DNA of 64,000 bases, taken from NCBI GenBank assembly GCA_002269645.1, contig NIVC01000029.1, forward strand, positions 992,001 to 1,056,000. Direction: 5' to 3'. The position numbers and the translations under genes are program-made. Positions 30,789-64,000 of the stretch are shown piece after piece (position 1 is the first letter of the stretch; each line of letters opens with the position of its first letter). This stretch comes from Macrostomum lignano (taxonomy: Eukaryota). The notes below the pieces were generated by a model. The model did not search any database. It was not told the origin of the DNA and saw only the letters and a list, made by a program, of their open reading frames with translations.

Positions 30789-33700
30789 ATGAATCGACTT
30801 ATATCGTTCTCATGGATCTGGGTGACTGCATTGGTCATAACATATCTTGGATCAGTGAGTTGTCAAAGATGTAAGTACATGTGTATAAGCTGCAGTGGTG
30901 TTGGTGTCTAAAACTGTTTCAATAATACGATTAACAAGGACAGTAGGAACCCTGTCGCAGCGCCTTCGGTGACATCGTCCCACAAGGACAATTTTGCACA
31001 TTATGCTGACTCCTAAGCACATACAAGTGCCCCAATACTCTGTACGCAGACACAGCACTCATACACGCTGCCACAGGGTGTACAGCGGTCCTCTGACTTT
31101 CTAATCGTCAGACATGTACAGTCTCTGTGCCTTGGGGGGTTGGCCCTTGTGGGTCTGAATCTTCGTGAGCAAGCCCCAAATGAATGTGAATGTGCAGGCG
31201 ACAGAGTCAGACGAGTTTACCACTGAGCGGCTCTTACTATACTATACTGTGTTTTGCCGTGTCTAAAGTGACATTTGCAACATTTCAGGCCGAATTGAAG
31301 TCAGGAAAGGCTCCATTGAAAGCTCCTGGCAGTCGTCGATTTTGAATAATAATAGGCAGGCATATTGCTTTTACAAGCGGCTCGTTGGTGGTGACCAAGT
31401 CGGCAGCTACAAATATTTGCACACAGAGGAGGGCAAAAACGGAAATGATGCGGGAGCCGATGCAGGGTTTCACTGGTTTGTGATAAAGCTAAAGAAGCCT
31501 GAACTAATCAGCTCTGTGAATGTCAAAGTCAGAAGTGAGTCTTGCTTATAAAATTTGTGAATAAACTTTCAAATCAGGCTTTTTAACGTTTTTATTTTAT
31601 CAATGTTTTAACAGGCTTAAGCCAGACAGAACTTACGAATTTTGGAGACAATTTAAACGCTCGAGCCGCAGACATTGAGATCTGGACGTCTCAGGCGGAC
31701 CTGGATTTCGGGTCGGAGCACTGCAACTCAAAGAGCATCAGCTCTGTGTATGATAATGCAGTGAGCGGGACATGGGAGTTTTGCGGCAAAACGCCAAACG
31801 CTCATGGAGAAACACTGACAGTTCCTTGTATCAGGGATCAGGTAACGATTTTTTTGCGTGAAGTTTAAATTAAGTAGAAATGATTCAACTTTATCCATTA
31901 AATTATGGGCAAAATATAGAATAATTTAGAATTTATTAAGTTTTCAGTTTGGTAGAGGGGGTGGTAGCCTGGTGGTTTGCGTCAGACTCTCAACTGGAAG
32001 GTTGGGGGTTCGATTCCCGATCGCACTGGAACTATTTGTGTCCTTGAGCAAGACCCTTAACTCTGCATTGCTTCAGCTGTAAAATGGGTGCCAGCATTAG
32101 CTGGGGTAATTGAGGTTGTGTGAGCGACTCCCCAGTCCTTGGACTGAACAGCCGTACGCAGCCTTCAGATGCACCGCGCAAATAGCTGCGGCTGAGCTGT
32201 CGGTTGCACATCTGGCCCAAATGGGGTAGGTGTTAGTCTAGGCAAAAACTGAGTCAAGTCATGTTTGCAAGCGAAGGAGAATACCATTGAAAGATCTCTA
32301 CCGAAGTGACGAAAGTTACTTCGATTTATTTGACTACATAACACGAAACCACGTACATTAGTAGACAAACGCCATCCGATTGGCTGGGGGTTAAAACCAT
32401 GCACACTGGCAAGCACAAATGTACACAGGTAGGGGTAAAACGATAGCGCGCAAGAATGATCAGTCACGGGAGGGAGAGAGAGAGAGAGAGAGAGAGACAG
32501 TGAAACAACATGAAAAAACCAAAGTACAACCCCAACACTGCTCCCTCCAAAAGCAGAAAAACAAAAAACAAAAGAAAGCAAGATCTGTCCTTAGACCTTA
32601 TAACAAACAGGTTTACGAGGCCGCAAATCATACGAGCTTTGGGGCTGGAGAGTCTCATCTCCAGAACTCAGCGGGGAGTCACAGTCAGTCACCTCAGGTT
32701 CACGCAGCTCCGAGTCAGAGCCAGCCTTGGCACCCTGAATCGATAGCCCAGCCTGATCCTCGGATCCAGCCGCCTCGGTCAGCCGCCGATCGGCCTCCGC
32801 CTCCGGGCGGCAGCTCCATTGGTTTGCGTGCGCCATCCGCAGTCCACCGTCTGGTAGGTCAGCTGAGGTCACCAGAGCTGTGTTCCGGCCGTGCTGCACG
32901 ATGAACTTGGCCGGAACCGGAGCCGTGCCAGGCCGAGCCCTCAGCCAGATGGAGTCACCCACCTGCTCGGTCATCGTCAGCGGATGGCGCAGCCGGCGTC
33001 CCCACATGAGAATGTCCGGCGAGCTGGATCGATTCCCGCTAGGCCTGCTGGTGCGAATGGTTAGGAGCAATTTCTGCAGGAACTGGTCAAATGGGACCAC
33101 TTTCGTCCACGTCTTCAGCCCGCCTTTGAGACTCCTCACCAACCGCTCAGCCTGCCCGTTCGATGCCGGATGGTACGGTGGGGTGTGCATCTCCTGGCAG
33201 CCCGACACTGTTCAGCCACTGCGAGACTCCTTCCGACCTGAACTCAGGCGCATTATCCGACACTAGCGTCCGAGGCACTTCATTTCTGGCGAACACCGCT
33301 CTCAGCACTCTCAGCACACTGCCCGCAGACCTGTCTGGGACCTGGACAGCTTCGGGCCAACCCGAGTATGCATCAGACAGCAACAGCAGCAAGCCCACTC
33401 CTGGCACCTCACAGTGGTCCATGTGGACCCGGGACCACGGCTCGCTCTCGGATGGCCAATTTGGTCAATTTTCCGCTGAACCACCGGCCGTCTTTCAGCG
33501 CACAGCTGACACCGCTCAACAAACTGACGGACATCGCGATCCAGTCCAGGCCACCAGAACTCCTTAGACACATGGGCCTTCGTATTTTCCGCGCTCGGGT
33601 GCACCTCATCATGCGCGGTCTCCAAAATGCGCCGCCGGAGAATGGTCGGAAGCACCACCCTGGTACCGTGGATGACCAGCCCGTTCTCCACAGACAACGC

Positions 33701-36700
33701 TTCCCGACACGCTTTGTACGGCCGCTCCAGCTGAGAGACCTGACCCCACCGGCCTGTCCTGATTCTCTGCTGGAGTCTTTGAAGCAGTGAACACCGGGAA
33801 GTACTTTCTCTCAGCTCCTCCACGGTAACCAAGCCTCCGTCAGTGATCAACTCAGTCTGGTGAACAGACTCCGTCTCAGGATCGAGGTTTTCAAAGCTCA
33901 GCCTTGATAGAGCGTCAGCATCCTGCATCTTCTTTCCCGGCACATATTCAATCTCGTAATCATAAGCCGATAGCCGCAGAGCCCACCGGGTTAGTCTGGC
34001 AGAAACAGTCTTTGGAAGATTCTTGCAAGGATTCAGAATAAACTTCAAAGGCTCGTGATCGGTCTGCAGAATGAATTTCTTCCCTAGCAACATTTTCCGA
34101 GCTCGTTCAACCGCCCAAACAATAGCCAGCGCTTCTCTCTCGATGTTTGAGTAATTGGTTTCTGCCTGTGAGAGCGCCCTGGACATGAACATGACGGGAT
34201 GTCCAGACTGGACCAGCACCGCGCCCAAGGACTTCTCGCTCGCATCAACTCGAAGACAGACAGGCGCGGAAACATCAAACGGCTTGATGCACGGGTTTGA
34301 GGCCAGACTCCTTTTGACCTCCGAAAATGCCGCCTCAGCCACCGCGTTCCATTTAAAGACCCGGTCACCGCGGCGAAGCTCCTGAAGAGGCCGACATTTC
34401 TCAGAAAAGTTTGGAACCAGCCGTCCATAAAATTGAGCCAGTCCTAGAAATCTCTCCAAATCTTTCTTGGTCTTCGGCACCTCGACATCCATCACACGTT
34501 TCACCATGCCCGGATCGGGTTTTATTCCTTCATCATCAATAATGTGACCAAGAAACTTCAGGCTGTTGGCTTCCATCACGCAATTCGCTTCGTTGATCTT
34601 GACATTTGCGGCCTTTAACTTGTTGAGCACCTGCTCCCTAATTTTCTGCAACTCTGCCCGGCTTGCAGCACCGATCAGCACATCGTCCTGATATACTATG
34701 ACACATGGATGGTCTCCCAGGAGCTTTTCCATCACACGTTGAAAAACAGATGGCGACACCTTAATGCCGTACGGCAACCGGTTAAACCTGTAGCAACCAA
34801 ACGGAGTGTTTATGGTGGTCACCGCCTTCGATTCCTCATCCAGGGGAACCTGATAGTACGCATCCGATAGGTCTAACCGACAGAACAGCTTCTTGTTGGC
34901 CATTTTCGAAAAGGCTGTCTCAATCGAGGGAGTGAGGAAGGTCTGGTCTTGAACCAACCGATTAACAGCCGAATAATCTCCACAAATTCTCACGGATGCC
35001 CGATCTGACTTCACCGTCACCACAATTGGACTGCCCCATTCCGACGACATCACCTTCTCAACGATTCCAGCACTTTCCATCAGGTCCAGCTCCTTCTTAA
35101 CCAAGTGCTTCAGCGCTAAAGGCAGTTCTCTGGCTGCCTGGAAAATTGACCTAGCTCCAGCACAAAGACGGATTTCTCCCGTAGCACCAGATATTCCCAA
35201 CAAGCTCTCATACCTGTTGCTGGCGGCTGACTCATCAGAACTGGCATGGTGCACCGGTGCGAGGACCAGCAGATTCCGGCCGAGCAGCCCAAACTCCTGT
35301 TGGCAGTCGATGACGGGCAGCTCTGCCGCCTTGAAGCGGCCGATGTTGCCAGTGGTCTCCACCAGGCATTCCAGAACGCCCATCTGTCTCATAACGTGTC
35401 CGTCATACGCCAGCATGCGCGACTTCGCCGACTTCAGCGGGGGCCTTCCGAGCTCATTCCAGATCCTTCGTGAGATTAACGAGCAGGAGGCACCGCTGTC
35501 CTTCTCCATCAGTACTTCTCTGTGATTGATTTTCACAGTGCAGAACTCGGCAGGCTTTCCTTCTCCACAGTAGAATACGGGCTCATCACGATAGGAGTCT
35601 TCTGGACTCAGCTGAGTGTGGACTGCTTCAGCTGGGGCAGCGAAGTGGGTCCTGGCACCGCGGCACACACGGGCAAAGTGGCCAGGCTTTCCACATTGAT
35701 TGCAGGTGGCTCTCAGGGCTCGGCAGTCAGCGGGCTTCTGGTGCGATCTCAACCCGCAACGCTGACAGCGCTGGTGTCCGAAGTTCTGCTTCTGCCTCAT
35801 AACCGAATTAACGTTGACAGAGCAGGAGCTATCCGGATGGCAGTGAGCTTCATCAGCCGTAGTCAGACCCGCGGTCGACAGCGACCTAGCCTGGTGCACC
35901 ACCGAATCCACGAGAGTCGAATGAGCAGCAGCCAGGGACCCAGCTGAGAAGCTGCTGACCATCAGTAGCTGCTGAACATATTCTGTGACCTGATCGACCG
36001 TCAGTTCTTGAGTCACTTCACGTTCGAGCACCTTGTTCCTGATGTTCGAGTTGGCCAGACCGGCAATGAGCCGCATCTTGATAAGCGCTTCGGCGGGGTC
36101 CGCTCCTTCCTTTTTCAGGCTCTCGAACTCGCATACGACGGCTTGCTCCCTGAGACGAGCGGCATAGCTGGTGACGGTTTCGCCTTCGGCCTGGCGCATA
36201 GACATGAAGACTGTCCTCTCAGCGATCTGCAGTTTCTTCTTGGGCTCCACAAACGCCAGTAGGCATTGCTTGATTTCAGACCATTTCATCGCAGACGGGG
36301 TTTTTGGAACGGGAGCACGAGAAATGCCCGCAGACGAATTGCCCGCCGAGATTTGCCCGCAGGAGATTTGCCTGTGGAGATTTGCCCGCCGAGCTTTTCC
36401 CGCGGAGATGTGCCCGCAGTGCATTTTGCCCGTGAGCGAATTGCCCGTGGAGATTTGCCCGCCGAGAATTGCCCGCCGAGATTTGCCCGCAGTGCAATTT
36501 GCCCGCGAGTGAATTGCCCGCGAGCGAGTTGCCCGCCGAGTTTTTTCCCGCCGAGGTTTGCCCGCAATGCCTTTTTCCTGCAGCGCATTTGGCAGCTAGA
36601 TTCTGTCTGCATTGCCCCCCCCCCAAAAAAAAATATGCTTTTGATATGCAGTTACTATCAAAACGTTTTGATCGTGTAAATCTCTTTATTGAGATTAACA

Positions 36701-39316
36701 CGTACTAAGCATTGGGAAGGCAATGCAGACAAAATCTGCCGCGTCGCTAAATTCGCTGCAGGAAAAAGGCATTGCGGGCAAACCTCGGCGGGAAAAAACT
36801 CGGCGGGCAACTCGCTCGCGGGCAATTCACTCGCGGGCAAATTGCACTGCGGGCAAATCTCGGCGGGCAATTCTCGGCGGGCAAATCTCCACGGGCAATT
36901 CGCTCACGGGCAAAATGCACTGCGGGCACATCTCCGCGGGAAAAGCTCGGCGGGCAAATCTCCACGGGCAAATCTCCTGCGGGCAAATCTCGGCGGGCAA
37001 TTTGTCTGCGGGCAATTCTCATGGACCCTTTTGGAACAACCAGCTGCTTGACTTTTATAAGCTCAGCGACCCCGAGGCAGCCCATGAAAGCGTCGGTCAG
37101 CGCTCGTCTCTCGTCGGTATCTTCGACTCCTTTGGATCTGGCCTGGGCGTCAAATACTTCAACCCAGGCGCGAAGCTCATCTATGTTGCTTAACGGCAGC
37201 GTCTCTCTCAATTTGATGCTCATGATCCTGCTCGCGACGCCAAAATGTTAGTCTAGGCAAAAACTGAGTCAAGTCATGTTTGCAAGCGAAGGAGAATACC
37301 ATTGAAAGATCTCTACCGAAGTGACGAAAGTTACTTCGATTTATTTGACTACATAACACGAAACCACGTACATTAGTAGACAAACGCCATCCGATTGGCT
37401 GGGGGTTAAAACCATGCACACTGGCAAGCACAAATGTACACAGGTAGGGGTAAAACGATAGCGCGCAAGAATGATCAGTCACGGGAGGGAGAGAGAGAGA
37501 GAGAGAGAGAGACAGTGAAACAACATGAAAAACCAAAGTACAACCCCAACAGTAGGTGTAAATATTTAATTAATTACTTATTATTATTTATCAGGTTCGG
37601 ATAATACTACTTCGAAAATATGTCGCTAATGAAACTGTGCCACAAAGGCAGTGCATGAACTTTGTCGATATGTGGATTGGCCTCCATGGCGTCAAAAGTA
37701 AGTCGCTAAAATTCAAATTTTAAGTTATATTTCCCATCCATTGTACCGCTGTTCGTATCTGATCTCTCCAGCTGTTTTTCAAACTTCAAACGAAGCTTCA
37801 ATTGGAGAAGTGAAACAGAACTCAAGTGTGACAGTGAGCTGCCAATCAAACTGCTCAATAAATACCTCACTGATCACTCTGACTCGCGACGACGAGAATC
37901 GAACTCTTGCAAACGGAAGCCAGGCTTATGAGATTTCGCATGTGCAACCATCGGATGCGGGAAACTACATCTGCAGAGCAGGTGGTGTCGTGTTGAGCTC
38001 CAAGTATCTTCGTGTGCTGTGTGAGTTGTGTAATGTTCCTATTTGACTTATTTAATAACAACTCAAAGACAAAAATATTTCATTCAATTGTTGTGGGCTA
38101 TTCTGAACAGCAAATTTTAAGAATCCCTTAAAATATTGTCAAGGTATCCAACGTACAATGTGCTTTGGCAGAGAGGTACGTACATGTAGTACTGATGTTT
38201 AATAAAGTAGGGTTTGAAAATTTCTATCAATGAATCCATGACAGACAGATAGAAATACACATATGTCGAAGATGATAAATGACTCGTTCTGTGGTTGCTC
38301 CATCTAAGATTAATATCATACAATCTACGTGGTGTCTTCTGAGAATATCAGGTCCTAAACCACATAGTCAGGCTTAACAAATGAGTTTAAAATACTTTGG
38401 GTGTCAGTTTGGAATGCATTGCAACTTTTTGAAAGTATATTTGGTTTAACCATTGGTGTGGAAGTTCAATATGTTGAAATATATTTTGTAGCTAATTTAC
38501 TTTTCATCTACAAACGAATCCGTCAGATCCCCCAGTCGAACAAGAAATCACTGTCGAAGATGAAGCTTGCATCAAAGAACAAGGAAAAGATGTGGCACTT
38601 TCGTTCAGGTCCTCGTTCTCAGTGCCAGCACCTCGGCACGAATGTCATGCACTGAGTCCCATGCTGAAGAGGCTTCAAAGTAACACGGAGTTACAATCGA
38701 AGTCGCTGATATCAAAGTGGGTGTGCGAGAGCTGTTGCAGCTTGGATTGGTTCGCTGTGAATTGCTCAGCTAAGCAATTTGATGAAACTAAACAATCGGA
38801 ACTGTTCGCCTCCAGTGTTTGTCAAAAAATCCGGCCTAGAAAACGTAAGCCCAAATTAACTACGCTCGGAAATCTGTAGAAACTCAAGTTTTGAGCACAA
38901 ATTTCCACATTTCAGCTTCAGGCTCGGTTGAGAAGGGACAACTCATGATTTGGATTCAGTGGACACTCAATTTGATAATTATTGTCTCGATCATTGCACT
39001 ATGTACAGCGCTACTGAGAATTAAGGTAGTACTTCAGATGAGATTTTCTTACTGGCTAGACGCATGATTATGGGACAGGGTAAAGAAGCCCATCACAATG
39101 TGAAAACCGAAACAGCAGATTTGCTCAAGAGAAGTATAATTTGGTGTCACTGCTTCTAATGATGCTCGTTGCAGAAAAGTGCTGGCAGTGTCTGTCTGTA
39201 CACGTTCTGAATTTCAGAGACGACTTGATCTGCTTGAGCCTCCAATGGGTCTCGCTGAAAAGGGTCCTGTAGAAGCTCCTGCTGAGCACAGAACCAGTGT
39301 CTACGTTTATGAATAG
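30789..39316 (+). CDS. Receptor paralog F: SP - F-type-lectin-like - Ig - Cys-rich/FN3-like - TM - short tail (about 477 aa); intron 3 carries the gypsy element
   Basis: Exons 30789-30870, 31289-31534, 31615-31841, 37595-37697, 37772-38020 (Ig: VTVSC...DAGNYIC), 38527-38844, 38916-39025 (TM) and 39218-39316 (...HRTSVYVYE*). Total 1434 nt, open. The end of the tail is uncertain. Confidence 0.8.
32591..37223 (-). CDS. gag-pol polyprotein (Gag with CCHC knuckles, protease, RT, RNase H, integrase); interrupted by a MITE and two integrase frameshifts
   Basis: CQRCGLRSH and CNQCGKPGHFARVC knuckles; DSGAS protease; RLDLSDAYYQ and YQDD (RT); VDAS and NYSNIEREALA (RNase H); HPSAENT..CQLC, MDH, SDN and NGQAER (integrase). 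Frame changes near 33450 and 33205. Confidence 0.9.
36311..37028. mobile_element. Foldback/MULE-like MITE nested in gag, 9-bp TSD
   Basis: TSD TTTTGGAAC at 36302-36310 and 37029-37037. Termini GGGAGCACGAGAA/TTCTCATGGACCC; inverted GCCCG-module arms. Removing it restores ...KQLVVPKTPSAMKW... in Gag. Confidence 0.9.
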
Positions 39317-39491
39317 ACTTTTTGCGTATTCATTTAGAACTTACGATGAACTACATTTATACTATCGAATAGAGTCGGTCCGTGCAGCTGCGTTGTTGGA
39401 TGAATTGACTGGCAGACATGGTATCTTCTGTAACTATTTTTTTCGAACTGCAGAATTTATTCAGAGTGCTTAGCACCTTTAGGGTAGAGTG

Positions 39492-39745
39492 CCCATGCCC
39501 ACCATAAGACAGGGGCACCCACCATAAGACAGGGGCACCCACCATAAGACAGGGGCGCCTCTAAAAGACAGGGGCGCTTCTAAAAGACAGGGGCGCCCAC
39601 CAAAAGACAGGGGCGCCCACCATAAGACAGGGGCAACTCACCATAAGACAGGGGCACTTACCAAGAGACAGGGGCGCCCACCAAGAGCCAGGGGCACCCA
39701 CCAAAAGACAGGGGCGCCCACCATAAGACAGGAGCGCCAACCAAG
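39492..39745. repeat. About 20-bp minisatellite (CCACCATAAGACAGGGGCGC)n
   Basis: About 12 units visible. Confidence 0.9.
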
Positions 39746-40638
39746 CCACTTAATATCGGCTCCTTTTCCTTAATTCAGTGGCCCTGCAATAAAAATAGCT
39801 GCATATGCTACTGTTGGATACTACTGCAGTAGCAATATATGTAGTGCAGCACAAGAGGCGGAACATTTTGTTTCGCAAGGTTATTTGTCATGGAGACGAT
39901 TTTTATTCACAATATTTTAATATTTAAAACATTTGGTGTTTTATACCGAAGCCTTCCCTAGGGACCCATAATGGGTAAATAATGCATTTTTACTGGCCAT
40001 TATAATGACATTGAATGCCACTTAATGGCATTATAATTGCCACTTAATGGCATTATAATTGCCATTATAATGCAAATTCTATATATATAAAATGCATTTA
40101 TAATGTGGTTGCAATTAATTAGAAATAATGCATTTTTAGTCATCTTGCGAGCCATATATACTCGTATATATATGAATACATTGCACTTCGTACCTTCGTT
40201 TAAATCGGCTCATTAAAACCGTACTTAGTTCTATTCTGGTTTGTCTTACCAAACCATGGGCGATGTACACACAATAAGACACACTCAAAATAACACAATT
40301 GGTTAGTTTTATGTATAAGACAGGTCTCAACTAAGTGAGTGAGCCGAAAATGTAATATTTATTACCAAACAAAGAAGCCAAATGTAAAAAAAAAATTTGT
40401 GTCCCCGGAGTTTTACGTAAAAGCAATTAAACATAAAAAACTGCAAAAATGTGACAAAGAATTAGGTGTATCTAAACAAAGCGCACGGCATATGAGAGAA
40501 AACGTAAAACATAACATGTAGGATAAATATAGCTGAGCATTAGGCGCGCATGTTTTGTGAAAAAGGGCTTTTTAGTTTAGAAAAACTAACAAGAAACAAA
40601 GCTTGCTTAAGTACAAGTACTAGATGGTACTGGGTCTA

Positions 40639-40793
40639 CGATGTTAGCCAGCCGGCGTTTGCTAGCCGAAAGTTTGCCAGTTAGTGTCTCTTTCTTGGTC
40701 CCGTCTAATTCCCCAGTCATATTTTCTTCCTGTGTCCTAGCAATAGAGCTTTTAGAATAAGCCTAGCACACACACATCGGCTGGCTAACATCG
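40639..40793. mobile_element. Small MITE-like inverted repeat (16-bp perfect IR CGATGTTAGCCAGCCG)
   Basis: 40639-40654 is the reverse complement of 40778-40793. Confidence 0.5.
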
Positions 40794-40955
40794 ACAAAAG
40801 CTACACAACAATAGCTACCCAGCAGATAAATCAGGAATACGTACCAGAAAAAATTTCATGCAATGATTACATTGACAACCAGGACTACTTACAGAATAGA
40901 AAACGAGACAAGACAATGACCCTGAAAAACTGACGCGCGTTTGAAGTTATCTGAG

Positions 40956-52310: not shown

Positions 52311-52359
52311 GCTTTTTTGTGTTTAGCATTTTGTGTTTTTAAGGTTTTTGAATAAAAAA

Positions 52360-53440: not shown

Positions 53441-54249
53441 AGCATTTACATTTCAGTAATTCTCTCTAAGAGTCATTATAGCGCTACTACAGCATTATAG
53501 CGATTCCCTGCAAGCCTCGACATCGTAGGGATTCCCAAATGCATCTCTTCACTTCGACATGAAGCTTCTTTTATTTTTTACATTACGCTTTTTTATCAGC
53601 GATCCCTCCCCTGAGGAGGCATCAAATAATGTAATAAAAAGTTTTCAATAAACTACATGTAGCTTCTGACTTTAGCCTTGAAATCTCATTTATACCCCCG
53701 TGAGCCTTGACATGTCAGCTATTCCCCCCGTAAGCCTTGACATGTCAGCGATGGCCTCCATAAACCTTGAAATCTAAAAAACCCCCCGTTAACCTTGAAA
53801 CCCGATAAAATCTAACCCTCAACCCAAACCTGACCTAAACCTAACTTTAACCCAACCTAAAGTCTTGAAATCTCAGCAATTCTTCTCCCCTAAGCCTTGA
53901 CATTTTAGTGATTCCTTCTTTAAGAATCACAGCACTATAACGATTTCCACCAAGCTTTGACATCGTAGCAATTCCCAAATGAATCTTTTAACTTCGACAT
54001 GACTCTTCTTTTATGTATACATTGTGCTACTTTTATTTTTTACATGACTCTTCTTCTATCAGCGCCCCCCCTGTGGCGAGCCAACAAATGTAATAAAAAA
54101 ATTGAGTAAAGTACATGAACTTTGAAGCAGCTTCTGACTTTTGCTTTGACATCTCAGAAACCCCCCCCCGTAATCTCAGTTATTCTCTGTGGGCCTTGAC
54201 GTCTCAGTTTTTCTCCCTAGCCCAGCACTATAGCTTCATTTAATTTTTA

Positions 54250-56210
54250 CATGACACCTTTCATGTCTGACATGACGCTTCTTTTATTCTACCATGATGC
54301 TTCTTGATTTTTTAAATGACACTTTCATTAGTTTTTAATGAGGCTTCTATGATTTTTTCATGACGCTTCTATTTACATGAAGCTTCTATGATTTTTTCAT
54401 GACACTCCTATGATTTCTTCATGACGCTTCAATGATTTTTACATGACGCTTCTATAATTGTTTACATGACGCTTCTATGATTTTTTTAAATGACGCTTCT
54501 ATGAGTTTTATATGACGCTTCTATGCTTTTTACATGACGCTTCTATGATTGTTTACATGACGCTTCTATGATTTTTTACATGACGCTTCTATGATTGTTT
54601 ACATGACGCTTCTATGATTGTTTACATGACGCTTCTATGATTTTTTTAAATGACGCTTCTATGAGTTTTACATGACGCTTCTATGATCGTTTACATGACG
54701 CTTCTATGATTTTTTTAAATGACGCTTCTATGCTTTTTACATGACGCTTCTATGATTTTTTACATGACGCTTCTATGATTGTTTACATGACGCTTCTATG
54801 ATTGTTTACATGACGCTTCTATGATTTTTTTAAATGACGCTTCTATGAGTTTTACATGACGCTTCTATGATCGTTTACATGACGCTTCTATAATTTTTTT
54901 AAATGACGCTTCTATGATTGTTTACATGACGCTTATATGATTTTTAACATGACGCTTCTATGATTGTTTACATGACGCTTCTATGATTGTTTACATGACG
55001 CTTCTATGATTTTTACATGACGCTTCTATGATTGTTTACATGACACTTCTATGATTTTTACATGACGCTTCTATGATTTTTTACATGACGCTTATATGAT
55101 TTTTAACATGACGCTTCTATGATTGTTTACATGACGCTTCTATGATTTTTTACATGACGCTTCTATGATTGTTTACATGACACTTCTATGATTTTTACAT
55201 GACGCTTCTATGATTTTTTACATGACGCTTCTATGATTTTTTTAAATGACGCTTCTATAATTGTTTACATGACGCTTCTATGATTTTTTCATGACACTCC
55301 TATGATTTTTTCATGACGCTTCTATGATTGTTTACATGACGCTTCTATGACTTTTTAGATGACGCTTCGATGATTGTTTACATGACGCTTCTATGATTTT
55401 TTACATGACGCTTCTATGATTTTTTACATGACGCTTCTATGATTGTTTACATGACGCTTCTATGATTTTAGATGACGCTTATATTATTTTTAACATGACG
55501 CTTCTATGATTGTTTACATGACGCTTTTATGATTTTTTACATGACGCTTCTATGATGGTTTACATGACGCTTCTATGATTTTTTACATGACACTTCTATG
55601 ATGGTTTACATGACGCTTCTATGATGGTTTACATGACGCTTCTATGATTTTTTACATGACGCTTCTATGATTTTTACATGACTTTTCTATGATTGTTTAC
55701 ATGACGCTTCTATGATTTTAGATGACGCTTATATGATTTTTAACATGACGCTTCTATGATTGTTTACATGACGCTTCTATGATTTTTTCATGACGATTCT
55801 ATGATTTTTTACATGACGCTTCTATGATTTTTTACATGAGGCTTCTATGATTTTTTTTCATGACGCTTCTATGATTGTTTACATGACGCTTCTATGATTT
55901 TTTACATGACGCTTCTATGATTTTTTACATGACGCTTCTATGATTTTTTACATGACTTTTCTATGATTGTTTACATGACGCTTCTATGATTTTAGATGAC
56001 GCTTATATTATTTTTAACATGACGCTTCTATGATTGTTTACATGACGCTTCTATGATTTTTTACATGACGCTTCTATGATGGTTTACATGACGCTTCTAT
56101 GATTTTTTACATGACACTTCTATGATGGTTTACATGACGCTTCTATGATGGTTTGCATGACGCTTCTATGATTGTTTACATGACGCTTCTATGATTTTTT
56201 TACATGACGC
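54250..56210. repeat. 23-bp satellite B (ACATGACGCTTCTATGATTGTTT)n
   Basis: Visible tandem units. Confidence 0.95.
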
Positions 56211-57129
56211 CTTTTGTCCTTTATTTGTCCTTGAATAAAAGCTTTTAATAAAAAACTTTCCACTACTAAGATTCGAACCCAGGTCGCTGCATTTGCAGTC
56301 CAGTCTGTTCACATCTAGGCTGGCTCTTATCGAATTTATAAATGAAATTGTAGCACTTATATAATTCAACACTTACTCACGAAGCAGTTATGACATAATC
56401 AATTTCCCAGGCAAGTCAGTATCAGTCTCAATTAAAGTTGAGAATATGGTTACGCAATCTAAATCAAGTCTGGTGCTACGCTTCCACACCGCATTTTCAA
56501 TACTGCGACGCAATTCAAGCTGGAGTTACAATTCAGCTATGATGCAATCTATTTCAGAATCAGAATTCAACCAGTCAGTTTTTTCTCTAGCATTCTTACA
56601 ATGCATTTCAAGTCGAAAAGTTTGCTTGATTTTTCCAAAAAGCATGTTTTTCGAATATTTAATCGCTTTAACATGGAGCAATTTCTTAGCCAAGATGCAT
56701 GTGCCGTCACGGGAAAATTTCTGATCGAACAGTGCAAGTCTCATGAAAATCGGTCCAGCCATTTTTTCTCCAATCGATTGCGTACAAACTCTAGAGCGTT
56801 ATGGACATTCATTCATTCAAGCATACAAACCTTAGAGATTTAGTATATTTAGATTTCTGGAATCTATCTCACAGAGACACACAACTCATTTTTAGTATAT
56901 GGGACAAGCAAGCATACAAATATTAGAGATTTAGTATATTTGGATAACTAATATTTTCCGGAGCGTATGCTGAAATTAAATGAAATGAGACGCAGTCGTA
57001 TTAACTGAGGGAGACATTTTTCAATGAATTAATTTTTGACGATCAAAATTTCTTCAGTTATTGTTTGAGTATTTATAAGATTAAAATTTCTCAAACGGTT
57101 GTTAGTTCTGCATAGCAATTGTTAGTTAG

Positions 57130-60100
57130 TTATTACTCATAGCAGTGCCACGTGTACGCATAGTAACCCCTTGGTAATTTTATCAGCAGGGACTTCAAAC
57201 ATCTGCATCTACGGCCATTGATCTCTTGAACAGATCCCGTCGGGTAGTACAACTTGCCAAGTTTGTCAGACTGGGTCCGAATGAGGGCGCAGCCGGCCCA
57301 TCCGCAGCGCCACCGCAATCTTGCTCTTCGATGCGCCCTCACGTAAACGTATTTGCATTGACAACCCTTGATGCCTCTATTGATCTCCAGACCCCAGGCC
57401 AAGCACTCTTTATTCTCGAAGTCATCAAAAATTAGGGCATCAGAAGCAGTAGAGGCAGCTGCAGAAATGAAGGCAATGGATTGCTAACCTATATCTGTTG
57501 TCGATTGACTCAAGCGCTTAAAGTGCTAAAATAAATCTCTTCGTTGAAATAGTCAGTTTTATTCTAGATAAAAAATCGTTGAAATAAGGAAATTTAGTAA
57601 AAAAATTCAGTATGACGATTCGGTTTTTTACTTTGTAGCATAATTAAGAAAAAATAGGTTCAGTTGATATTATTTATTCGAATCGTTTCTGCCTTTCCAG
57701 TGGTTCATATCTACGTTGAAGAATGACTTTCTACTGAAAAATATTGTTGCGGATACTCTGCATGGAAGCTACATGGGAATACGAAAACAATAGATTATTA
57801 GGATATAAATTTAGGAATTGAAGCTGATTAAGATAAAAAATTCAGGGGCATTTTACAGCAAGATGGAATCAAACCCGGTCGATAATGTCTGGATCTTATA
57901 TGAATTCGATGGATTACACCCATTAGCTAGTAGGCTGAACAGGACTTCTACTAATGAAGCCAGACACGTCCATGATGGTCTCCTTTTAATGTTAAATAAT
58001 TATAGAATATTTGGCGTTATACTGATATTAATATTGGCGCATAATTTTTGTTGCATTTTTATTCTCCGAAAGAACACTTTTCAAATTAAAAGTGTGGGCG
58101 ATTTCTCTTATTTACTGAGTATTCATAGAACCATTGCTTAAGCTTTGAAAAGCAGTATAACAAAACATTGTATACCATTCAATGTACATGTGTATCACGC
58201 AATTTCTCGAATTGCATAATTGCTAATCCACATCAATACCATTTGTACAATAAAACAAGAAGCATCAAAGTAAATTAAGCTGCAGTGGCTAACACCTTTT
58301 ACGAGTAGTATCCAGTTACAACCACCAGGTTCTAAAGTGACTCGACACCGCAGTGTCTTTCACCAAAGTGTCTCGCACCGCAGGGTCCAGCACCGAAGTG
58401 TCTTTCACCAAAGTGTCTGGCACCGCAGGGTCCAGCACCGAAGTGTCTTTCACCAAAGTGTCTGGCACCGCAGGGTCCAGCACCGAAGTGTCTTTCACCA
58501 AAGTGTCTGGCACCGCAGGGTCCAGCACCGAAGTGTCTTTCACCAAAGTGTCTGGCACCGCAGGGTCCAGCACCGAAGTGTCTTTCACCAAAGTGTCTGA
58601 CACCGCAGGGTCCGGCACCGAAGTGTCTGGCATCGAAGTGTCTGGCACCGAAGTGTCTTTCACCGAAGTGTCTGGCATCAAAGCATCTGGCACTGAAGTG
58701 TCTGGCATCGAAGTGTCTGGCACCGAAATGTCTGTTACTGAAGTGTCTGGCACCAAAGTGTCTGGCATCGAAGTGTCTGGCACCGAAGTGTCTTTCACCG
58801 AAGTGTCTGGCATCGAAGCATCTGGCACTGAAGTGTCTGGCATCGAAGTGTCTGGCACCGAAATGTCTGTTACTGAAGTGTCTGGCACCAAAGTGTCTGG
58901 CACCGAAGTGTCTGGCGCCGAAGTGTCTGGCACCAAAGTGTCTGGCACCGAAGTGTCTGGCACCGAAGTGTCTGGCGCCGAAGTGTCTTGCACCGAAGTG
59001 TCTGGCACCGCAGTGTTTGGCACCGAAGTGTCTGCGGCATCGAATAGAATCGAAGTGTCAGGCACCGAAGTATGTCACCGAAGTGTCTGGCATCGAAGCA
59101 TCTGGCACCGAAGTGTCTGGCACCGAAGTGTCTGGCACCGAAGCGTCTGGCGCCGAATTGTCTGGCACCGCAGTGTCTGGAATCGAAGTGTCAGGCACCG
59201 AAGTATGTCACCGAAGTGTCTGGCATCGAAGCATCTGGCACCGAAGTGTCAGGCATCCAAGTGTCTGGCACCGAAGTGTCTGGCAACGAAGTGTCTGGCA
59301 CCGAAGTGTCTGGCACCGAAGTGTCTTGCACCGAAGTGTCTGGCACCGAATTGTCTGGCACCGCAGTGTCTGGAATCGAAGTGTCAGGCACCGAAGTATG
59401 TCACCGAAGTGTCTGGCATCGAAGTATGTCACCGAAGTGTCTGGCATCGAAGTGTCAGGCATCCAAGTGTCTGGCACCGAAGTGTCTGGCAACGAAGTGT
59501 CTGGCACCGAAGTGTCTGGCACCGAAGTGTCTTGCACCGAAGTGTCTGGCACCGAATTGTCTGGCACCGCAGTGTCTGGAATCGAAGTGTCAGGCATCCA
59601 AGTGTCTGGCACCGAAGTGTCTGGCAACGAAGTGTCTGGCACCGAAGTGTCAGGCACCGAAGTATGTCACCGAAGTGTCTGGCATCGAAGCATCTGGCAC
59701 CGAAGTGTCTGGCATCGAAGTGTCAGGCATCCAAGTGTCTGGCACCGAAGTGTCTGGCAACGAAGTGTCTGGCACCGAAGTGTCTGGCACCGAAGTGTCT
59801 TGCACCGAAGTGTCTGGCACCGCAGTGTCTGGCACCGAAGTGTCTTGCACCGAAGTGTCTGGCATCGAAGCATCTGGCACCGAAGTGTCTTGCACCGAAG
59901 TGTCTGGCACCGCAGTGTCTGGCATCGAAGTGTCTGGCACCGAAGTGTCTGGGGCTAAAGTGTCTGGCATCGAATTGTCTGGCACCGCAGTGTCTGGAAT
60001 CGAAGTGTCAGGCACCGAAGTATGTCACCGAAGTGTCTGGCATCGAAGCATCTGGCACCGAAGTGTCTGGCATCGAAGTGTCAGGCATCCAAGTGTCTGG

Positions 60101-62850
60101 CACCGAAGTGTCTGGCACCGAAGTGTCTGGCACCGAAGTGTCTTGCACCAAGGGGCTTTAGCACCAAGGGGCTTTAGCACCAAGGGGCTTTAGCACCAAG
60201 GGGCTTTAGCACCAAGGGGCTTTAGCACCAAGGGGCTTTAGCACCAAGGGGCTTTAGCACCAAGGGGCTTTAGCACCAAGGGGCTTTAGCACCAAGGGGC
60301 TTTAGCACCAAGGGGCTTTAGCACCAAGGGGCTTTAGCACCAAGGGGCTTTAGCACCAAGGGGCTTTAGCACCAAGGGGCTTTAGCACCAAGGGGCTTTA
60401 GCACCAAGGGGCTTTAGCACCAAGGGGCTTTAGCACCAAGGGGCTTTAGCACCAAGGGGCTTTAGCACCAAGGGGCTTTAGCACCAAGGGGCTTTAGCAC
60501 CAAGGGGCTTTAGCACCAAGGGGCTTTAGCACCAAGGGGCTTTAGCACCAAGGGGCTTTAGCACCAAGGGGCTTTAGCACCAAGGGGCTTTAGCACCAAG
60601 GCAAATGCACTAAATGCAAAATTCTAAAAATGCTTGGCAAGTTTTCTGAGAACTGTAAAATCACACTAAATCAAATAAGCACAACTATAAAGCTATTTCC
60701 AATCGGCCGAGTATGGCAAGCTTGCGGTTTCTAGAATTAGTAAGGCTTACTTTAAACAGCAGTAGAAGTTATCTTTGCCAGTTTACAGTCTGCAGCCCTT
60801 CACAATACTTCTTAGTGTCATTTTTAGCTTTTGACCGGAATTAATAAATTATAATCTACTTATATATAAATAAAGTTACTATCTGTGCAAGCATTGGCAA
60901 CTAAATTTACTGATATCATCAATGAACACGTTGCACCAGTTTCACGGCTTCGAATATATCTAGAAAAGCGCTGCCGAACGAAAATAACAACAATTTAATA
61001 TTCTCTCACTCAGTTCTCGGAACTGCATCAGTCGAAAACATTGTCAGCTAGGGTTGAATTTAAATATGAATCGACTTATATCGTTCTCATGGATCTGGGT
61101 GACTGCATTGGTCATAACATTTCTTGGATCAGTGAGTTGTCAAAGATGTAAGTACATGTGTATAAGCTGCAGTGGTGTTGGTGTCTAAAACTGTTTCAAT
61201 AATACGATTAACAAGGACAGTAGGAACCCTGTCGCAGCGCCTTCGGTGACATCGTCCCACAAGGACAATTTTGCACATTTCTCTGACTCCTAAGCACATA
61301 CAAGTTCCCCAATACTCTGTACGCAGACACAGCACTCATACACGCTGCCACAGGGTGTACAGCGGTCCCCTGACTTTCTAATCGTCAGGCATGTACACTC
61401 CCTGTGCCTTGGGGGCTGGCCCTTGTGGGTCTGAATCTTCGTGCGCAAGCCCCAAATGAATGTGAATGTGGCGACAGAGTCAGACGAGTTTACCACTGAG
61501 CGGCTCTGACTATACTATGCGTGTTTTGCCGTGTCTAAAGTGACATTTGCAACATTTCAGGCCGAATTGAAGTCAGGAAAGGCTCCATTGAACGCTCCTG
61601 GCAGTCGTCGATTTTGGAAAACGATAGGTCGAAATATTGCTTTTACAAGCGGCCCGTTGGTGGTGACCAAGTCGGCAGCTACAAATATTTGCACACAGAG
61701 GAGGGCAAAAACGGAAATGATGCGGGAGCCGATGCAGGGTTTCACTGGTTTGTGATAAAGCTAAAGAAGCCTGAACTAATCAGCTCTGTGAATGTCAAAG
61801 TCAGAAGTGAGTCTTGCTTGCAAAATTTGTGAATAAACTTTCAAATCAGGCTTTTTAACGTTTTTATTTCATCAATTTTCTTAACAGCCTTAAGCCAGAC
61901 AGAACTTACGAATTATGGAGACGATTTAAACGCTCGAGCCGCAGACATTGAGATCTGGACGTCTCAGACGGACCTGGATTTCGGGTCGGAGCACTGCAAC
62001 TCAAAGAGCATCAGCTCTGTGTATGATAATGCAGTGAGCGAGACATGGGAGTTTTGCGGCAAAACGCCAACAAATGTTTCTCATGGAGAAACACTGACAG
62101 TTCCTTGTATCAGGGATCAGGTAACAATTTTTTGCGTGAAGTTTAAATAGAGTAGAAATGATTCAATTTTATCCACCATATTGTGACCCCGAGAAAAGAC
62201 ACTAAACTCTGTATTGCTTCAGCTGTAAAATGGGTGCCAGCATTAGCTGGGGTAATTGAGGGTGTGTGGGCGACCCCTCAGTCCTTGGACTGAACAGCCG
62301 TACGCAGCCTTCAGATGCGCCGCGCAATAGCTGCGGCTGAGCTGTCGGTTGCACATCTGGCCCAAATGGGGTAGGTGTAAATATTTAATTAATTACTTAT
62401 TATTATTTATCAGGTTCAGATAATACTACTTCGAAAATATGTCGCCAATGAAACTGTGCCACAAAGACAGTGCATGAACTTTGTCGATATGTGGATCGGC
62501 CTCCATGGCGTTCAAAGTGAGTCGCTATATAAATTTAAAATCTTAAGATAGTTCCCATCCAATGTACCGCTAATCATATCTGATCTCATCCAGCTGATTT
62601 TCAAACATTGAACGGATCTTCAATTGGACAAGTGAAACAGAACTCAAGTGTGACAGTGAGCTGCCAATCAAACTGCTCAATAAATACCTCACTGATCACT
62701 CTGACTCGAAATGACGAGAATCGAACTCTTGCAAACGGAAGCCAGGCTTATGAGATTTCGCATGTGCAACCATCAGATGCGGGAAACTACACCTGCAGAG
62801 CAGGTGGTGTCGTGTTGAGCTCCAAGTATCTTCGCGTGCTGTGTGAGTTG
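57130..62850 (+). repeat. Segmental duplication, copy 2 (upstream region + exons 1-5 of G)
   Basis: Near-identical to 27280-32230 plus 37557-38030; lacks the LTR element. Confidence 0.9.
58343..60601. repeat. Expanded 15-bp (CACCGAAGTGTCTGG)n array fused directly to a 16-bp (AGCACCAAGGGGCTTT)n array
   Basis: 15-mer about 58343-60145; 16-mer 60146-60601. Confidence 0.95.
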
Positions 62851-64000
62851 ATGCACTTAAAAGGGATTAGGCTCAAGACTGTTTATATGTTTAATGTATG
62901 AAACAAATTTAAGAAGTGAGCATTATCTGAGACGTACTAAATAAACATGAAATTCTAATTTTAACTAATACATTTGCGTAACTTCCAGTATGCTAACTAC
63001 ATCAAGCTCGGAGCCACTTTTTAAAGATTTCTTTTATACCATTAATTGACTAGTTGCATCACTATTTTAGCCCCTCTTATTATTCTTGGTAAACTATAAC
63101 TTCTTATAATTAAAAAACTCTACCGTATTTCAGATCCTCCGATGGACCTTACAATCGGGATAGTCAAGTCCTGCAACTGCGACACCAACTCTGCCAGCCA
63201 ACTGCTGACTTTCGAGTTCAAGTCATCCGAGTCAGAGCCAGTAGCGAATCACAGCTGCTCTGTGAATGGCAATCTTTCAAATGAAATTAACGCCACTGTT
63301 GCTGTCACAGCCGAGGAATTGAACAACTCTTTTGACAACGGTTCAGTGAAAAAAATCCAGTTGGACCTGCTATGACTGTTGTACAGCCATCGGCTTGTCG
63401 AATTTAACTATAAATTGCACGGCTGTTCAGTCAGGAGTGCCCTGGCATTCGACCATCACCGAAATTCTTTCAATATCTAGATGTGGTACGCAAGTCCTTT
63501 ACGTCTCGCAAGTCATGACGGACTTAAAATACGCATTGGAGAAATATTACACTGTAGTATATAAATAAATAAAAATCTTTGACACGTTTAGCAGGGACTA
63601 CGTGTAGTACAGTATCTAACGTCAGTGGAAAACTATCTGGGTAAAATAAGGATAGACTAGAGTATTACTCGTATTTTTATACTTACGCTCGTATTTAGGA
63701 TTTTTAGTTGAGATTTTTAGCCACACTGAACACTGTAAAATATTCAGAGACGAAGTCGGTTGGCTCGAAACAGCAGAAAGAACCCTTATGGTTGGCATTC
63801 GTCTTAACCGTATCGACAGTGGTTGCGGTGGGCGTTCTTGCTCTAGCGATCATCTACCAGATGAGAAAGGTGAATTCCAATGAATTTCTTATAACGATCT
63901 TGTACTGAAATTTACACAGAAGTTTTAAATTATTTTATAAACTTTAGAAGCCGGCAGTTCAGGTGCAACCGCAAAAGTCTCAGGAAGTTGAAACTAAGCC
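61066..64000 (+). CDS. Receptor paralog G (runs off the window): SP - F-type-lectin-like - Ig - Cys-rich/FN3-like (+1 frameshift in an A7 run) - TM - tail start
   Basis: Exons 61066-61147, 61561-61806, 61888-62120, 62414-62516, 62594-62842 (Ig), 63134-63485 (352 nt; frameshift at 63349-63355), 63721-63869 (TM LWLAFVLTVSTVVAVGVLALAIIYQMRK) and 63948 onward. Confidence 0.78.

What the first reader, a model, noticed from the sequence alone, without database searches (positions are those of the whole stretch)
30789..64000. F and G share a near-identical 5' half up to the Ig exon, then switch to unrelated stalk, TM and tail exons
Seen: about 3.5-4 kb of upstream DNA plus exons 1-5 are duplicated. 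Similarity stops a few bases into the intron after the Ig exon (GTGAGTTGTGTAAT in F vs GTGAGTTGATGCAC in G). The Cys-rich exon, TM and tail are only remotely homologous; F ends ...TSVYVYE*. Inference: a second, independent case of a ligand-binding head joined to a different signalling base by partial duplication or conversion. The sharp breakpoint argues against a simple uncollapsed haplotype.
Basis: partly seen in the sequence, partly recalled or inferred. Interest (0 to 1): 0.7.

Follow-up and report, generated by a model that had tools for sequence, protein, structure and literature searches.

The report
Two flatworm receptor genes sharing one head
Two neighbouring receptor genes of the flatworm Macrostomum lignano share an almost identical promoter region and sugar-binding "head" but have unrelated membrane and tail parts, a real case of the module swapping well known from vertebrate immune "paired receptors", here in an uncharacterised flatworm-only gene family.

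Summary
F (30789-39316) and G (61066 to past the window end) share about 3.6-3.9 kb of upstream DNA plus exons 1-5. Identity is 94-99% in the exons and 88-100% in the non-coding blocks. Similarity stops 8 nt into intron 5; beyond that the DNA aligns no better than shuffled sequence. The stalk/TM parts are only 22% identical as protein and the tails do not align.

The genome is Macrostomum lignano Mlig_3_7. A second assembled copy of the locus (contig C843, probably a homeolog) carries both genes in the same order with the same breakpoints. F and G are therefore neither alleles nor a mis-join.

The head is a carbohydrate-binding-module / F-type-lectin-like beta-sandwich followed by one Ig domain. 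G's 108-aa tail carries an ITSM-type motif (TEYIEI) that recurs in distant family members. F's tail is 35 aa without one.

F's intron 3 holds a 5.3-kb LTR retrotransposon. A decayed head fragment (psiE) abuts the unit's left edge. The shared block is a mosaic of short exchange patches. Each locus copy has one damaged partner.

The best reading is that G's 5' module was copied into a neighbouring old paralog, followed by patchy ectopic conversion. The genetic phenomenon is known; the family is new.

The parts
25993..27199 (+). psiE: a decayed head fragment (exons 1-4 only) that ends 35 bp into its intron 4, directly abutting the left edge of the F unit
   Evidence: tblastn. The alignment to G shows a stop at codon 9 of exon 1, a 10-bp deletion at the end of exon 2, a 1-bp indel in exon 3 and a 2-bp deletion in exon 4. 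The exon-4 frame break is also seen in C843.
27200..30788 (+). F copy of the shared upstream block. It starts AGCGCTCGCCTACAAGCC and contains a 15-mer array (28502-29112, x41) and a 16-mer array (29720-30327, x38).
   Evidence: 98.5% and 96.3% identical to G outside the arrays
30789..30870 (+). F exon 1 (signal peptide)
31289..31534 (+). F exon 2 (lectin-like head, part 1)
31615..31841 (+). F exon 3 (lectin-like head, part 2)
31908..32230 (+). SINE-like dispersed repeat in intron 3. It is present in psiE, F, F' and G'. Its 5' 130 bp are deleted only in G of this contig.
   Evidence: (2,551 first-look candidates genome-wide)
32231..37551 (-). Ty3/gypsy-type LTR retrotransposon inserted in F intron 3 (F and F' only). 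LTRs are 32231-32537 and 37246-37551, with TG..CA ends and a 5-bp target-site duplication GTAGG. The pol ORF is 33311-36595.
   Evidence: zinc knuckle-PR-RT-RNaseH-integrase Zn finger; G shows the empty site; the LTRs differ by one 1-nt indel; 99% identical to M. lignano BOX15_Mlig032248g1
37595..37697 (+). F exon 4 (end of the head domain)
37772..38020 (+). F exon 5 (Ig domain), the last shared exon
38021..38028 (+). F breakpoint: the last 8 shared bases, GTGAGTTG (the splice donor), after which similarity to G is at random level
38527..38844 (+). F exon 6 (Cys-rich stalk, F type)
   Evidence: (found only in F and F')
38916..39025 (+). F exon 7 (transmembrane; no charged residue)
39218..39316 (+). 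F exon 8 (with the last residues of exon 7, a 35-aa cytoplasmic tail ending TSVYVYE*)
39317..49189 (.). F-G spacer. About 9 kb of it (39955-48912) is absent from the C843 copy. It holds a 20-mer array, an 816-aa DUF1258 ORF (40956-43406, minus strand) and a Mos1/mariner-like transposase fragment (45964-46689).
49190..49244 (+). Leftmost 55 bp of G's copy of the shared unit, separated from the rest by an insertion
49245..57119 (.). 7.9-kb insertion private to this contig's G upstream block. It contains 23-mer satellite arrays and a (CTAACC)x57 telomere-type array at 53103-53440.
57120..61065 (+). G copy of the shared upstream block (15-mer array x121 at 58346-60149; 16-mer array x29 at 60145-60601)
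61066..62842 (+). G exons 1-5: 61066-61147, 61561-61806, 61888-62120, 62414-62516, 62594-62842
62843..62850 (+). G breakpoint (GTGAGTTG)
63134..63485 (+). G exon 6 (Cys-rich stalk, G type). An A7 run at 63350-63356 shifts the frame here. The C843 copy has A6 and reads through.
63748..63869 (+). G exon 7 (transmembrane)
63948..64000 (+). Start of G exon 8 (tail). It continues past the window to 64106. Exon 9 is 64203-64370 and holds IYTAL and TEYIEI.

Best explanation
F and G are adjacent members of a large, fast-evolving family of type I membrane receptors, so far found only in Macrostomum lignano. The architecture is signal peptide, F-lectin/CBM32-like head, Ig domain, six-cysteine stalk, TM, variable tail. 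Their 3' halves are ancient paralogs.

Their 5' halves (about 3.6-3.9 kb of upstream DNA through exon 5 plus 8 nt) descend from one recent copy.

Inferred sequence of events:
1. G's 5' module was duplicated into the neighbouring older gene.
2. It entered 35 bp into that gene's intron 4 and replaced everything up to the exon-5 donor.
3. The recipient's own exons 1-4 were orphaned and decayed into psiE. Its exons 6-8 became F's 3' half.
4. The frame survived because the introns on both sides of the Ig exon are phase 1.
5. The two homologous blocks of 6 kb or more, together with psiE, then kept exchanging short tracts by ectopic gene conversion.

Functional consequence (inferred, not shown): one glycan-binding ectodomain is wired to two outputs. 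One is a long tail with an ITSM-type tyrosine motif (G). The other is a short motif-less tail (F). This is the logic of vertebrate paired receptors.
For: Shown:
- Non-coding and coding DNA are equally similar up to a base-sharp edge, then random.
- The 3' halves are 22% identical with the same exon phases and conserved cysteines.
- A second assembled copy of the locus (C843) has psiE', F' and G' in the same order, with both breakpoints spanned contiguously. The arrangement therefore predates the split of the two copies and is not a join error.
- The unit's left edge in F and F' abuts a truncated intron 4 of psiE. In G' it abuts unrelated DNA, and no orphan head exons lie upstream of G or G'. 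This fits G as donor and F as recipient.

Mosaic within the shared block:
- Upstream block: 0 sites support orthology and 34 are singletons, a star tree at 1.3-1.8%.
- Exons 1-3: F is no further from G or G' (2.9-3.5%) than they are from each other.
- Cross-pattern patch at 32041-32066: F=G' against F'=G=E=E'.
- A 130-bp patch at 37678-37807 holds 17 of the 21 fixed F/G differences in the exon 4-5 block. F=F'=E=E' wherever E is scorable.
- Exon-2 motif NNNRQAY (F, G') against ENDRSKY/ENDRSAH (G, psiE).

Function of the parts:
- Head: profile hits to F-type lectins, 3cqo at E=1.4e-4, 3le0 at 0.017, 1k12 at 0.027.
- A head-only AF2 model of a paralog has pLDDT 80.7 and pTM 0.83. It matches CBM32 and F-lectin folds at probability 1.0, with TM-score by target 0.6-0.71.
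- An ITSM-type motif is present in G/G' (TEYIEI/TDYIEI) and in three other distant tail lineages: TVYLEI, TEYLDI, and TEYTEI together with the ITIM VVYAQV.

Organism and assembly.
Against: - No reads or transcripts could be examined, so expression, splicing and the exact base calls are unverified.
- The direction (G to F) and the one-step insertion are inferred from junction anatomy only.
- psiE is 8-9% from F and G in exons 2-3. The recipient's head was therefore already related to G's, which needs an earlier round of exchange.
- F's TM has no charged residue and its tail has no known motif, so 'activating partner' is not supported.
- G's membrane-proximal tyrosine (ECIYTAL) is not a canonical ITIM.
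- G on this contig is frameshifted and F' on C843 lacks exons 1-3. In neither copy are both partners demonstrably intact.
- dN/dS in the head is 0.4-0.9, not above 1.
- The structural model is of a 41%-identical paralog, not of F itself.
Confidence: 0.75

Rival explanations
1. The same outcome by a different route. An unequal crossover (NAHR) between two tandem paralogs whose heads were already similar produced a hybrid gene (G head, neighbour's tail) between them. A later deletion then removed the 3' half of the upstream parent and left psiE.
For: psiE exons 2-4 are 88-93% identical to F and G, introns included, so homology for NAHR existed. A deletion endpoint would automatically define the left edge of F-G similarity. 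Deletions are frequent here: the F' 1.58-kb deletion and the G SINE deletion.
Against: It needs two events instead of one. The crossover would have had to fall in the last bases of exon 5 or the first 8 nt of the intron. No trace of the duplicated spacer or of a second F-type 3' half exists in the genome.
Confidence: 0.2
2. Assembly artefact. F and G are homeologous or allelic versions of one gene wrongly laid out in tandem, or F is a chimeric mis-join.
For: Mlig_3_7 is highly redundant. It holds three subgenomes, and 36% of its length lies in scaffolds chimeric between subgenomes. Long tandem arrays flank the genes.
Against: Two separately assembled contigs (C29 and C843) carry both genes in the same order with the same breakpoints. 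Subgenome copies differ by about 1.4-2.4% in SNPs, whereas the F and G 3' halves cannot be aligned as DNA. F has a private retrotransposon with a target-site duplication, and G shows the empty site. F-F' and G-G' pair up at 21 of 21 informative sites in exons 4-5.
Confidence: 0.04
3. A whole-gene tandem duplication followed by very fast divergence of the 3' half under selection, with no partial copying or conversion.
For: Tails and stalks of this family are very variable.
Against: Intron 5 is at the level of shuffled sequence, while introns 1-4 and 3.6 kb of upstream DNA are 88-98.5% identical. Selection on protein cannot produce a base-sharp edge in non-coding DNA. The site patterns are incongruent between segments.
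Confidence: 0.02
4. The structural event is real but has no functional meaning. F is a neutral by-product of a recombination-prone, pseudogene-rich cluster, not one half of a functioning receptor pair.
For: psiE is dead. F' lacks exons 1-3 and G has a frameshift. Neither F nor G matched any database protein at E <= 0.001, although other family members are annotated. F's tail has no motif. dN/dS is 0.4-0.9.
Against: F keeps a full open frame of 477 codons with eight clean splice-site pairs. F' exons 4-8 are also still open. The ITSM-type motif is conserved in distant tails.
Confidence: 0.35

Closest known systems
SIGLEC11 / SIGLEC16 and SIGLEC5 / SIGLEC14 paired receptors of primates (PMC5701461, PMC4042635)
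   Same: Neighbouring genes encode a transmembrane lectin with Ig domains. An upstream region plus the first exons, which encode the glycan-binding part, are 97-99% identical through repeated gene conversion. The similarity ends near an exon boundary. The 3' exons give different TM and tail signalling. One partner carries ITIM/ITSM-type motifs. Non-functional alleles of one partner are common.
   Different: The glycan-binding domain here is an F-lectin/CBM32-like jelly roll rather than a V-set Ig. The family is unrelated and flatworm-specific. The short-tailed partner has no charged TM residue. The founding 3' edge lies where no homology continues, so the first event was not classical conversion. 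Function and expression are unknown.
KIR, LILR and CEACAM paired activating/inhibitory receptor clusters (PMC3533184, PMC2832619)
   Same: Tandem, rapidly evolving clusters. Ectodomain exons are homogenised or shuffled between members with different tails. The clusters contain pseudogene fragments, hybrid genes and presence/absence variation.
   Different: Those families are all-Ig ectodomains of vertebrate leukocytes with defined adaptors. None of this has been shown here.
F-type lectins (fucolectins: eel agglutinin 1k12, striped bass FBP32 3cqo, lectinolysin 3le0; PMC5712786)
   Same: These are the best sequence-profile hits, and they share the fold class. The core WW-x-VDL...SVTITNR...R-x-x-GAEI aligns with GFHWF-V-L...SVTV-x-R...RA-x-IEI.
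   Different: The fucose-binding signature is not kept in F or G. The His-to-Arg spacing is 31-36 instead of about 26. No Pfam model reaches its threshold. The fold matches CBM32 at least as well as it matches F-lectins.
Intron-mediated exon shuffling between phase-1 introns
   Same: The junction lies in a phase-1 intron next to an Ig exon, so the frame is kept.
   Different: Here a whole 5' module including the promoter was moved between paralogs of one family, not a single domain between unrelated genes.

Membership tests
Paired receptors (activating/inhibitory pairs) | Two genes with closely related ligand-binding ectodomains | tested here: met
   The heads are about 93% identical as protein, with 94-99% identity in exon DNA.
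Paired receptors (activating/inhibitory pairs) | The inhibitory partner has ITIM/ITSM in a long cytoplasmic tail | tested here: inconclusive
   G has a tail of about 108 aa with TEYIEI, which fits T-x-Y-x-x-[VI]. The same motif type occurs in three other tail lineages. The proximal motif ECIYTAL is not a canonical ITIM. Phosphorylation and SH2 binding were not tested.
Paired receptors (activating/inhibitory pairs) | The activating partner has a short tail and a charged TM residue that recruits an ITAM adaptor | tested here: not met
   F's tail is short (35 aa), but its TM (WTLNLIIIVSIIALCTALL) has no K, R, D or E.
Paired receptors (activating/inhibitory pairs) | Both partners expressed on the same cells and binding the same ligand | not testable with these tools
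   No expression or binding data were available.
Ectopic (non-allelic) gene conversion tract | Non-coding DNA is as similar as coding DNA, and segments give incongruent trees | tested here: met
Ectopic (non-allelic) gene conversion tract | Homology continues on both sides of the tract | tested here: not met
   Beyond the 3' edge (38028 / 62850) the two genes are at random-level similarity. The founding event is better described as a partial duplication or illegitimate junction. Conversion applies to the later internal patches.
F-type lectin domain | F-type / galactose-binding-domain-like jelly-roll fold | tested here: met
   The head-only model has pLDDT 80.7. Foldseek matches CBM32 and F-lectins (1k12, 2j1r, 2j22, 3le0) at probability 1.0. 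The model is of paralog P0127, which is 41% identical to F's head.
F-type lectin domain | Fucose-binding signature H-x(24-26)-R-x-D-x(4)-R/K | tested here: not met
   The two Arg positions align, but the conserved His is offset, with 31-36 residues to the first Arg. F and G have R-S/T-L instead of R-x-D.
F-type lectin domain | Reaches the curated Pfam threshold (F5_F8_type_C / F5_F8_type_C_2) | tested here: not met
   Scores where shown are 14-17 bits against cut-offs of about 28. 10 of 17 members touch PF00754 below threshold.
Immunoglobulin superfamily domain (exon 5) | Pfam Ig model above its gathering score | tested here: met
   Ig_3 scores 31.3 bits (F) and 33.2 bits (G) against a cut-off of 30 on the exon translations.
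Ty3/gypsy LTR retrotransposon (the insertion in F intron 3) | Two LTRs with TG..CA ends, a 5-bp target-site duplication, and pol order PR-RT-RNaseH-IN | tested here: met

The most novel reading that the evidence does not exclude
A flatworm-specific family of lectin-Ig receptors has independently arrived at vertebrate-style paired receptors. One glycan-binding head is kept matched between an ITSM-bearing partner and a short-tailed partner by ongoing ectopic exchange, with a pseudogene fragment acting as an extra sequence donor. After the recent genome duplication, the two locus copies each disabled a different partner (F intact and G frameshifted on C29; F' decapitated and G' intact on C843).
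Probability: 0.2. Interest if true: 0.7.

Novelty: new variant of a known kind. Interest (0 to 1): 0.45.

Why it matters
Head-sharing between receptor genes with different tails is a hallmark of vertebrate innate immune clusters such as Siglec, KIR, LILR and CEACAM.

Finding the same genetic architecture in a free-living flatworm would point to convergent evolution of paired-receptor logic outside the deuterostomes. Here it is built on a different sugar-binding fold, and it belongs to a family that in the databases searched occurs only in M. lignano, with tyrosine motifs of ITIM/ITSM type.

It would also give the family a first functional hypothesis. M. lignano is a tractable model, with transgenesis reported for it and, from my own knowledge, RNAi by soaking, so the hypothesis can be tested.

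The locus also shows how recent polyploidy interacts with a recombining gene cluster. On the technical side, it is a worked example showing that this redundant assembly can be used as its own control against mis-assembly.

Tried and rejected
- **Full-length F against 5.8 billion proteins:** no hit. The word pre-filter missed real family members that a profile search later found.
- **Spliced proteins for structure prediction:** Paralogs that looked intronless in the genome search turned out to have in-frame stops in their introns.
- **COX1 search to place the organism:** nothing found. The likely reason is that the assembly copy lacks the mitochondrial scaffold. The organism was identified instead from the retrotransposon pol ORF.
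- **Whole-protein AF2 model of P0127:** poor (pLDDT 56). Its fold search returned only generic Fab-like beta-sandwiches. I discarded it and used a head-only model instead.
- **'Two clean layers' hypothesis, withdrawn:** I first inferred a young/old switch at about 31908 with the retrotransposon acting as a heterology barrier. The three supporting sites were G'-only. The six-way table shows a patch mosaic instead. The LTRs (1 indel in 307) are younger than the divergence they were meant to explain.
- **psiE exons 1-3 as a 5' end for the decapitated F':** rejected, because psiE has a stop and three frameshifts.
- **tRNA origin of the intron-3 repeat:** not supported by ARAGORN.
- **Literature search for this family in Macrostomum:** nothing found.
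Full report
**1. The observation**

A self-comparison of the window and a base-level alignment show that F and G share a long 5' unit.

- In F the unit runs from 27200 to 38028.
- In G it runs from 57120 to 62850. A further 55 bp of its left end sit at 49190-49244, split off by a 7.9-kb insertion.

Block by block, identity is 98.5% and 96.3% upstream, 94.2-98.8% in exons 1-5 and 87.5-100% in introns 1-4. The first 8 nt of intron 5 (GTGAGTTG) are identical. The rest of intron 5 then has 23.9% identical alignment columns, against 23.1% for shuffled sequence. The edge is therefore sharp to the base.

The copies are not collinear. F carries an extra 5.3 kb between 32231 and 37551.

**2. Gene models**

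F has eight exons, all with GT/AG borders and consistent phases. They give a 477-aa type I membrane protein ending TSVYVYE*. Exon 5 is an Ig domain.

G has the same first five exons, then a stalk exon (63134-63485) and a TM exon (63748-63869). Its two tail exons start at 63948 and run past the window end to 64370.

The stalk+TM parts of F and G are 22% identical over 163 aa (E=6e-8). All six stalk cysteines and the exon phases are conserved. The tails cannot be aligned.

**3. Organism and assembly**

The pol ORF of the element inside F is 99% identical to a Macrostomum lignano protein. The genome handle has 764,410,778 bp in 5,269 sequences. The published Mlig_3_7 assembly has 764,424,962 bp in 5,270 scaffolds (PMC5730564). 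The difference of 14,184 bp would fit a mitochondrial scaffold, which would explain the missing COX1.

The sequenced DV1 line is highly inbred. The assembly contains three homeologous subgenomes that differ by about 1.4-2.4% in SNPs and by many indels. 36% of its length lies in scaffolds chimeric between subgenomes (PMC10733133).

**4. Not alleles, not a mis-join**

A second contig, C843, is collinear with the window in reverse orientation over at least 60 kb. It carries D', psiE', F' and G' in the same order. F' spans the F breakpoint contiguously, and G' spans the G breakpoint. The cross-matches stop at exactly 38028 and 62850.

The F-type 3' half occurs only in F and F'. In the stretch tested, the G-type 3' part occurs only in G and G'. 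Given the literature, C843 is most simply a homeologous (subgenome) copy. If it is an allele, the argument is unchanged. I could not examine reads.

**5. What the shared block looks like inside**

With four copies (F, F', G, G') and psiE/psiE' as a third paralog, relationships change along the unit:

- **Upstream block (27266-28480).** All six pairwise distances are 1.3-1.8%. No site supports orthology, three sites group by contig and 34 are singletons.
- **Exons 1-3 block.** F is 3.5% from G and 2.9% from G', while G and G' differ by 3.5%. F' lacks this block.
- **Exon 2.** The motif SIL-NNNRQAY is shared by F and G'. SIL-ENDRS(K/A)(Y/H) is shared by G and psiE.
- **Intron-3 repeat.** In a patch at 32041-32066, F and G' are set against F', G, E and E' at 8 sites.
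- **Exons 4-5.** 21 of 21 informative sites pair F with F' and G with G'. Seventeen of them lie in one 130-bp patch (37678-37807). Wherever psiE can be scored there, F=F'=E=E' and G/G' are the odd ones out. Outside the patch, fixed divergence is about 1.2%.

So there was one founding copy not much older than the C29/C843 split, overlaid by short exchange tracts among psiE, F and G. My earlier two-layer reading was wrong and is withdrawn.

**6. Junction anatomy and the likely founding event (inference)**

The unit's left edge (AGCGCTCGCCTACAAGCC, 27200) abuts, in F and F', the first 35 bp of intron 4 of psiE. psiE is a head fragment of exons 1-4 with a stop at codon 9 and three frame-breaking indels.

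In G' the same edge abuts unrelated DNA. No orphan head exons lie upstream of G or G'.

The simplest history is that G's 5' module was copied into the neighbouring older paralog. It replaced the stretch from that gene's intron 4 to its exon-5 donor. This orphaned exons 1-4 (now psiE) and captured exons 6-8 (now F's 3' half). The phase-1 introns kept the frame.

No homology continues beyond the 3' edge. This first event was therefore an illegitimate or partial-duplication junction, not classical gene conversion. The shared 8-nt donor may mark microhomology. The main alternative is an unequal crossover followed by a deletion.

**7. What the proteins are**

Full-length F found nothing in 5.8 billion proteins. 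A profile of exon-2 segments found 17 representatives among 1.84 billion proteins. All ten clusters I looked up are M. lignano proteins, named only 'hypothetical' or 'Ig-like domain-containing'. In the genome the head gives over 100 exon matches on many contigs.

A profile of ten spliced heads hits F-type lectins best in the PDB: 3cqo at 1.4e-4, 3le0 at 0.017 and 1k12 at 0.027. Pfam stays below threshold.

A head-only AlphaFold model of a paralog (P0127, pLDDT 80.7, pTM 0.83) matches CBM32 modules, F-lectins and other galactose-binding-domain-like folds at probability 1.0. The fucose-binding signature is not kept in F or G, so I call the head F-lectin-like rather than a member of the F-lectin family.

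G's tail holds IYTAL and TEYIEI (TDYIEI in G'). The T-x-Y-x-[DE]-I motif recurs in three other distant tail lineages. One of them also has a canonical ITIM, VVYAQV. F has a 35-aa tail without such motifs and no charged TM residue.

**8. Damage in each copy**

- On this contig, G's stalk exon has A7 where G' has A6, giving a frameshift and a stop. This may be a real null or a homopolymer error.
- On C843, F' has a clean 1.58-kb deletion that joins the 16-mer array to window position 31900. It removes the proximal promoter and exons 1-3. F' exons 4-8 are still open.

If both are real, each locus copy keeps a different partner.

**9. Comparison and verdict**

The closest known analogue is the SIGLEC11/16 pair. 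There, an upstream region plus the first exons are 97-99% identical through repeated conversion, the similarity ends near an exon end, and a non-functional allele is common (PMC5701461). SIGLEC5/14, KIR, LILR and CEACAM clusters show the same phenomenon.

The genetic phenomenon is therefore known. What is new is the family, the fold of the binding domain and the phylum. Function, expression and the paired-receptor reading remain inferences.

Noticed in passing
window 32231-37551 (minus strand): A young Ty3/gypsy-type LTR retrotransposon sits in F intron 3. It has an open 1094-aa gag-pol frame, LTRs that differ by one 1-nt indel, target-site duplication GTAGG, and 99% protein identity to an annotated M. 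lignano copy. It is present in F and F' but not in G, G' or psiE. I described it only; the whole element was never printed or assembled.
   Followed up: partly
window 53103-53440: An interstitial telomere-type array, (CTAACC)x57, lies inside the 7.9-kb insertion that splits G's upstream block on this contig. This may be of interest given the chromosome fusions reported for this species.
   Followed up: no
window 63350-63356 and C843:~255270: G has A7 and G' has A6 in the stalk exon, and only G' reads through. Conversely, F' on C843 lacks exons 1-3 while F is intact. This could be reciprocal inactivation of the two partners in the two locus copies, or two assembly errors.
   Followed up: partly
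window ~31900-31908; C843:269976: Two independent deletion endpoints lie 8 bp apart, just 5' of the intron-3 repeat: the right end of the F' 1.58-kb deletion and the left end of G's private 130-bp SINE deletion. This may be a fragile or recombinogenic spot.
   Followed up: partly
window 49181-49190 vs 37738-37747: At the left edge of G's unit on this contig, the 9-10 nt CCATCCATTG replace the GCAGCGCTC seen in G', F and F'. They are identical to the F intron-4 sequence that follows the point where psiE's homology stops. This could be a repair footprint or chance. Unexplained.
   Followed up: no
window 6682-7459 (+) and 23312-22560 (-); C843:277523-278302: Genes B and D share only head exons 2-4, in inverted orientation at 86%. 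B is 94% identical to the D' copy on C843.
   Followed up: no
window 28502-29112 / 58346-60149 and 29720-30327 / 60145-60601: The shared upstream block contains two minisatellites whose copy numbers differ strongly between F and G: a 15-mer (x41 vs x121) and a 16-mer (x38 vs x29). The 16-mer array is also longer in F' (about 1 kb).
   Followed up: no
window 39955-48912: About 9 kb of the F-G spacer is absent from C843. It contains an 816-aa open frame with a DUF1258 match (40956-43406, minus strand) and a Mos1/mariner-type transposase fragment (45964-46689). F and G are 17.8 kb apart here but about 2.1 kb apart on C843.
   Followed up: partly
L003: C29:1059187-1061376 (window-equivalent 67187-69376): A further family member (H) lies just downstream of G. 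It has head, Ig and stalk exons, and its stalk is weakly similar to F's (25% identity).
   Followed up: no
whole family: Neither F nor G matched any database protein at E <= 0.001, although other family members are annotated (for example PAA53557.1 and UniProt A0A1I8GJD6). Automatic names such as 'Sushi', 'CUB' or 'Fibrinogen C-terminal domain-containing' on some members found no support in the Pfam scan for the one such member tested (P0123).
   Followed up: partly
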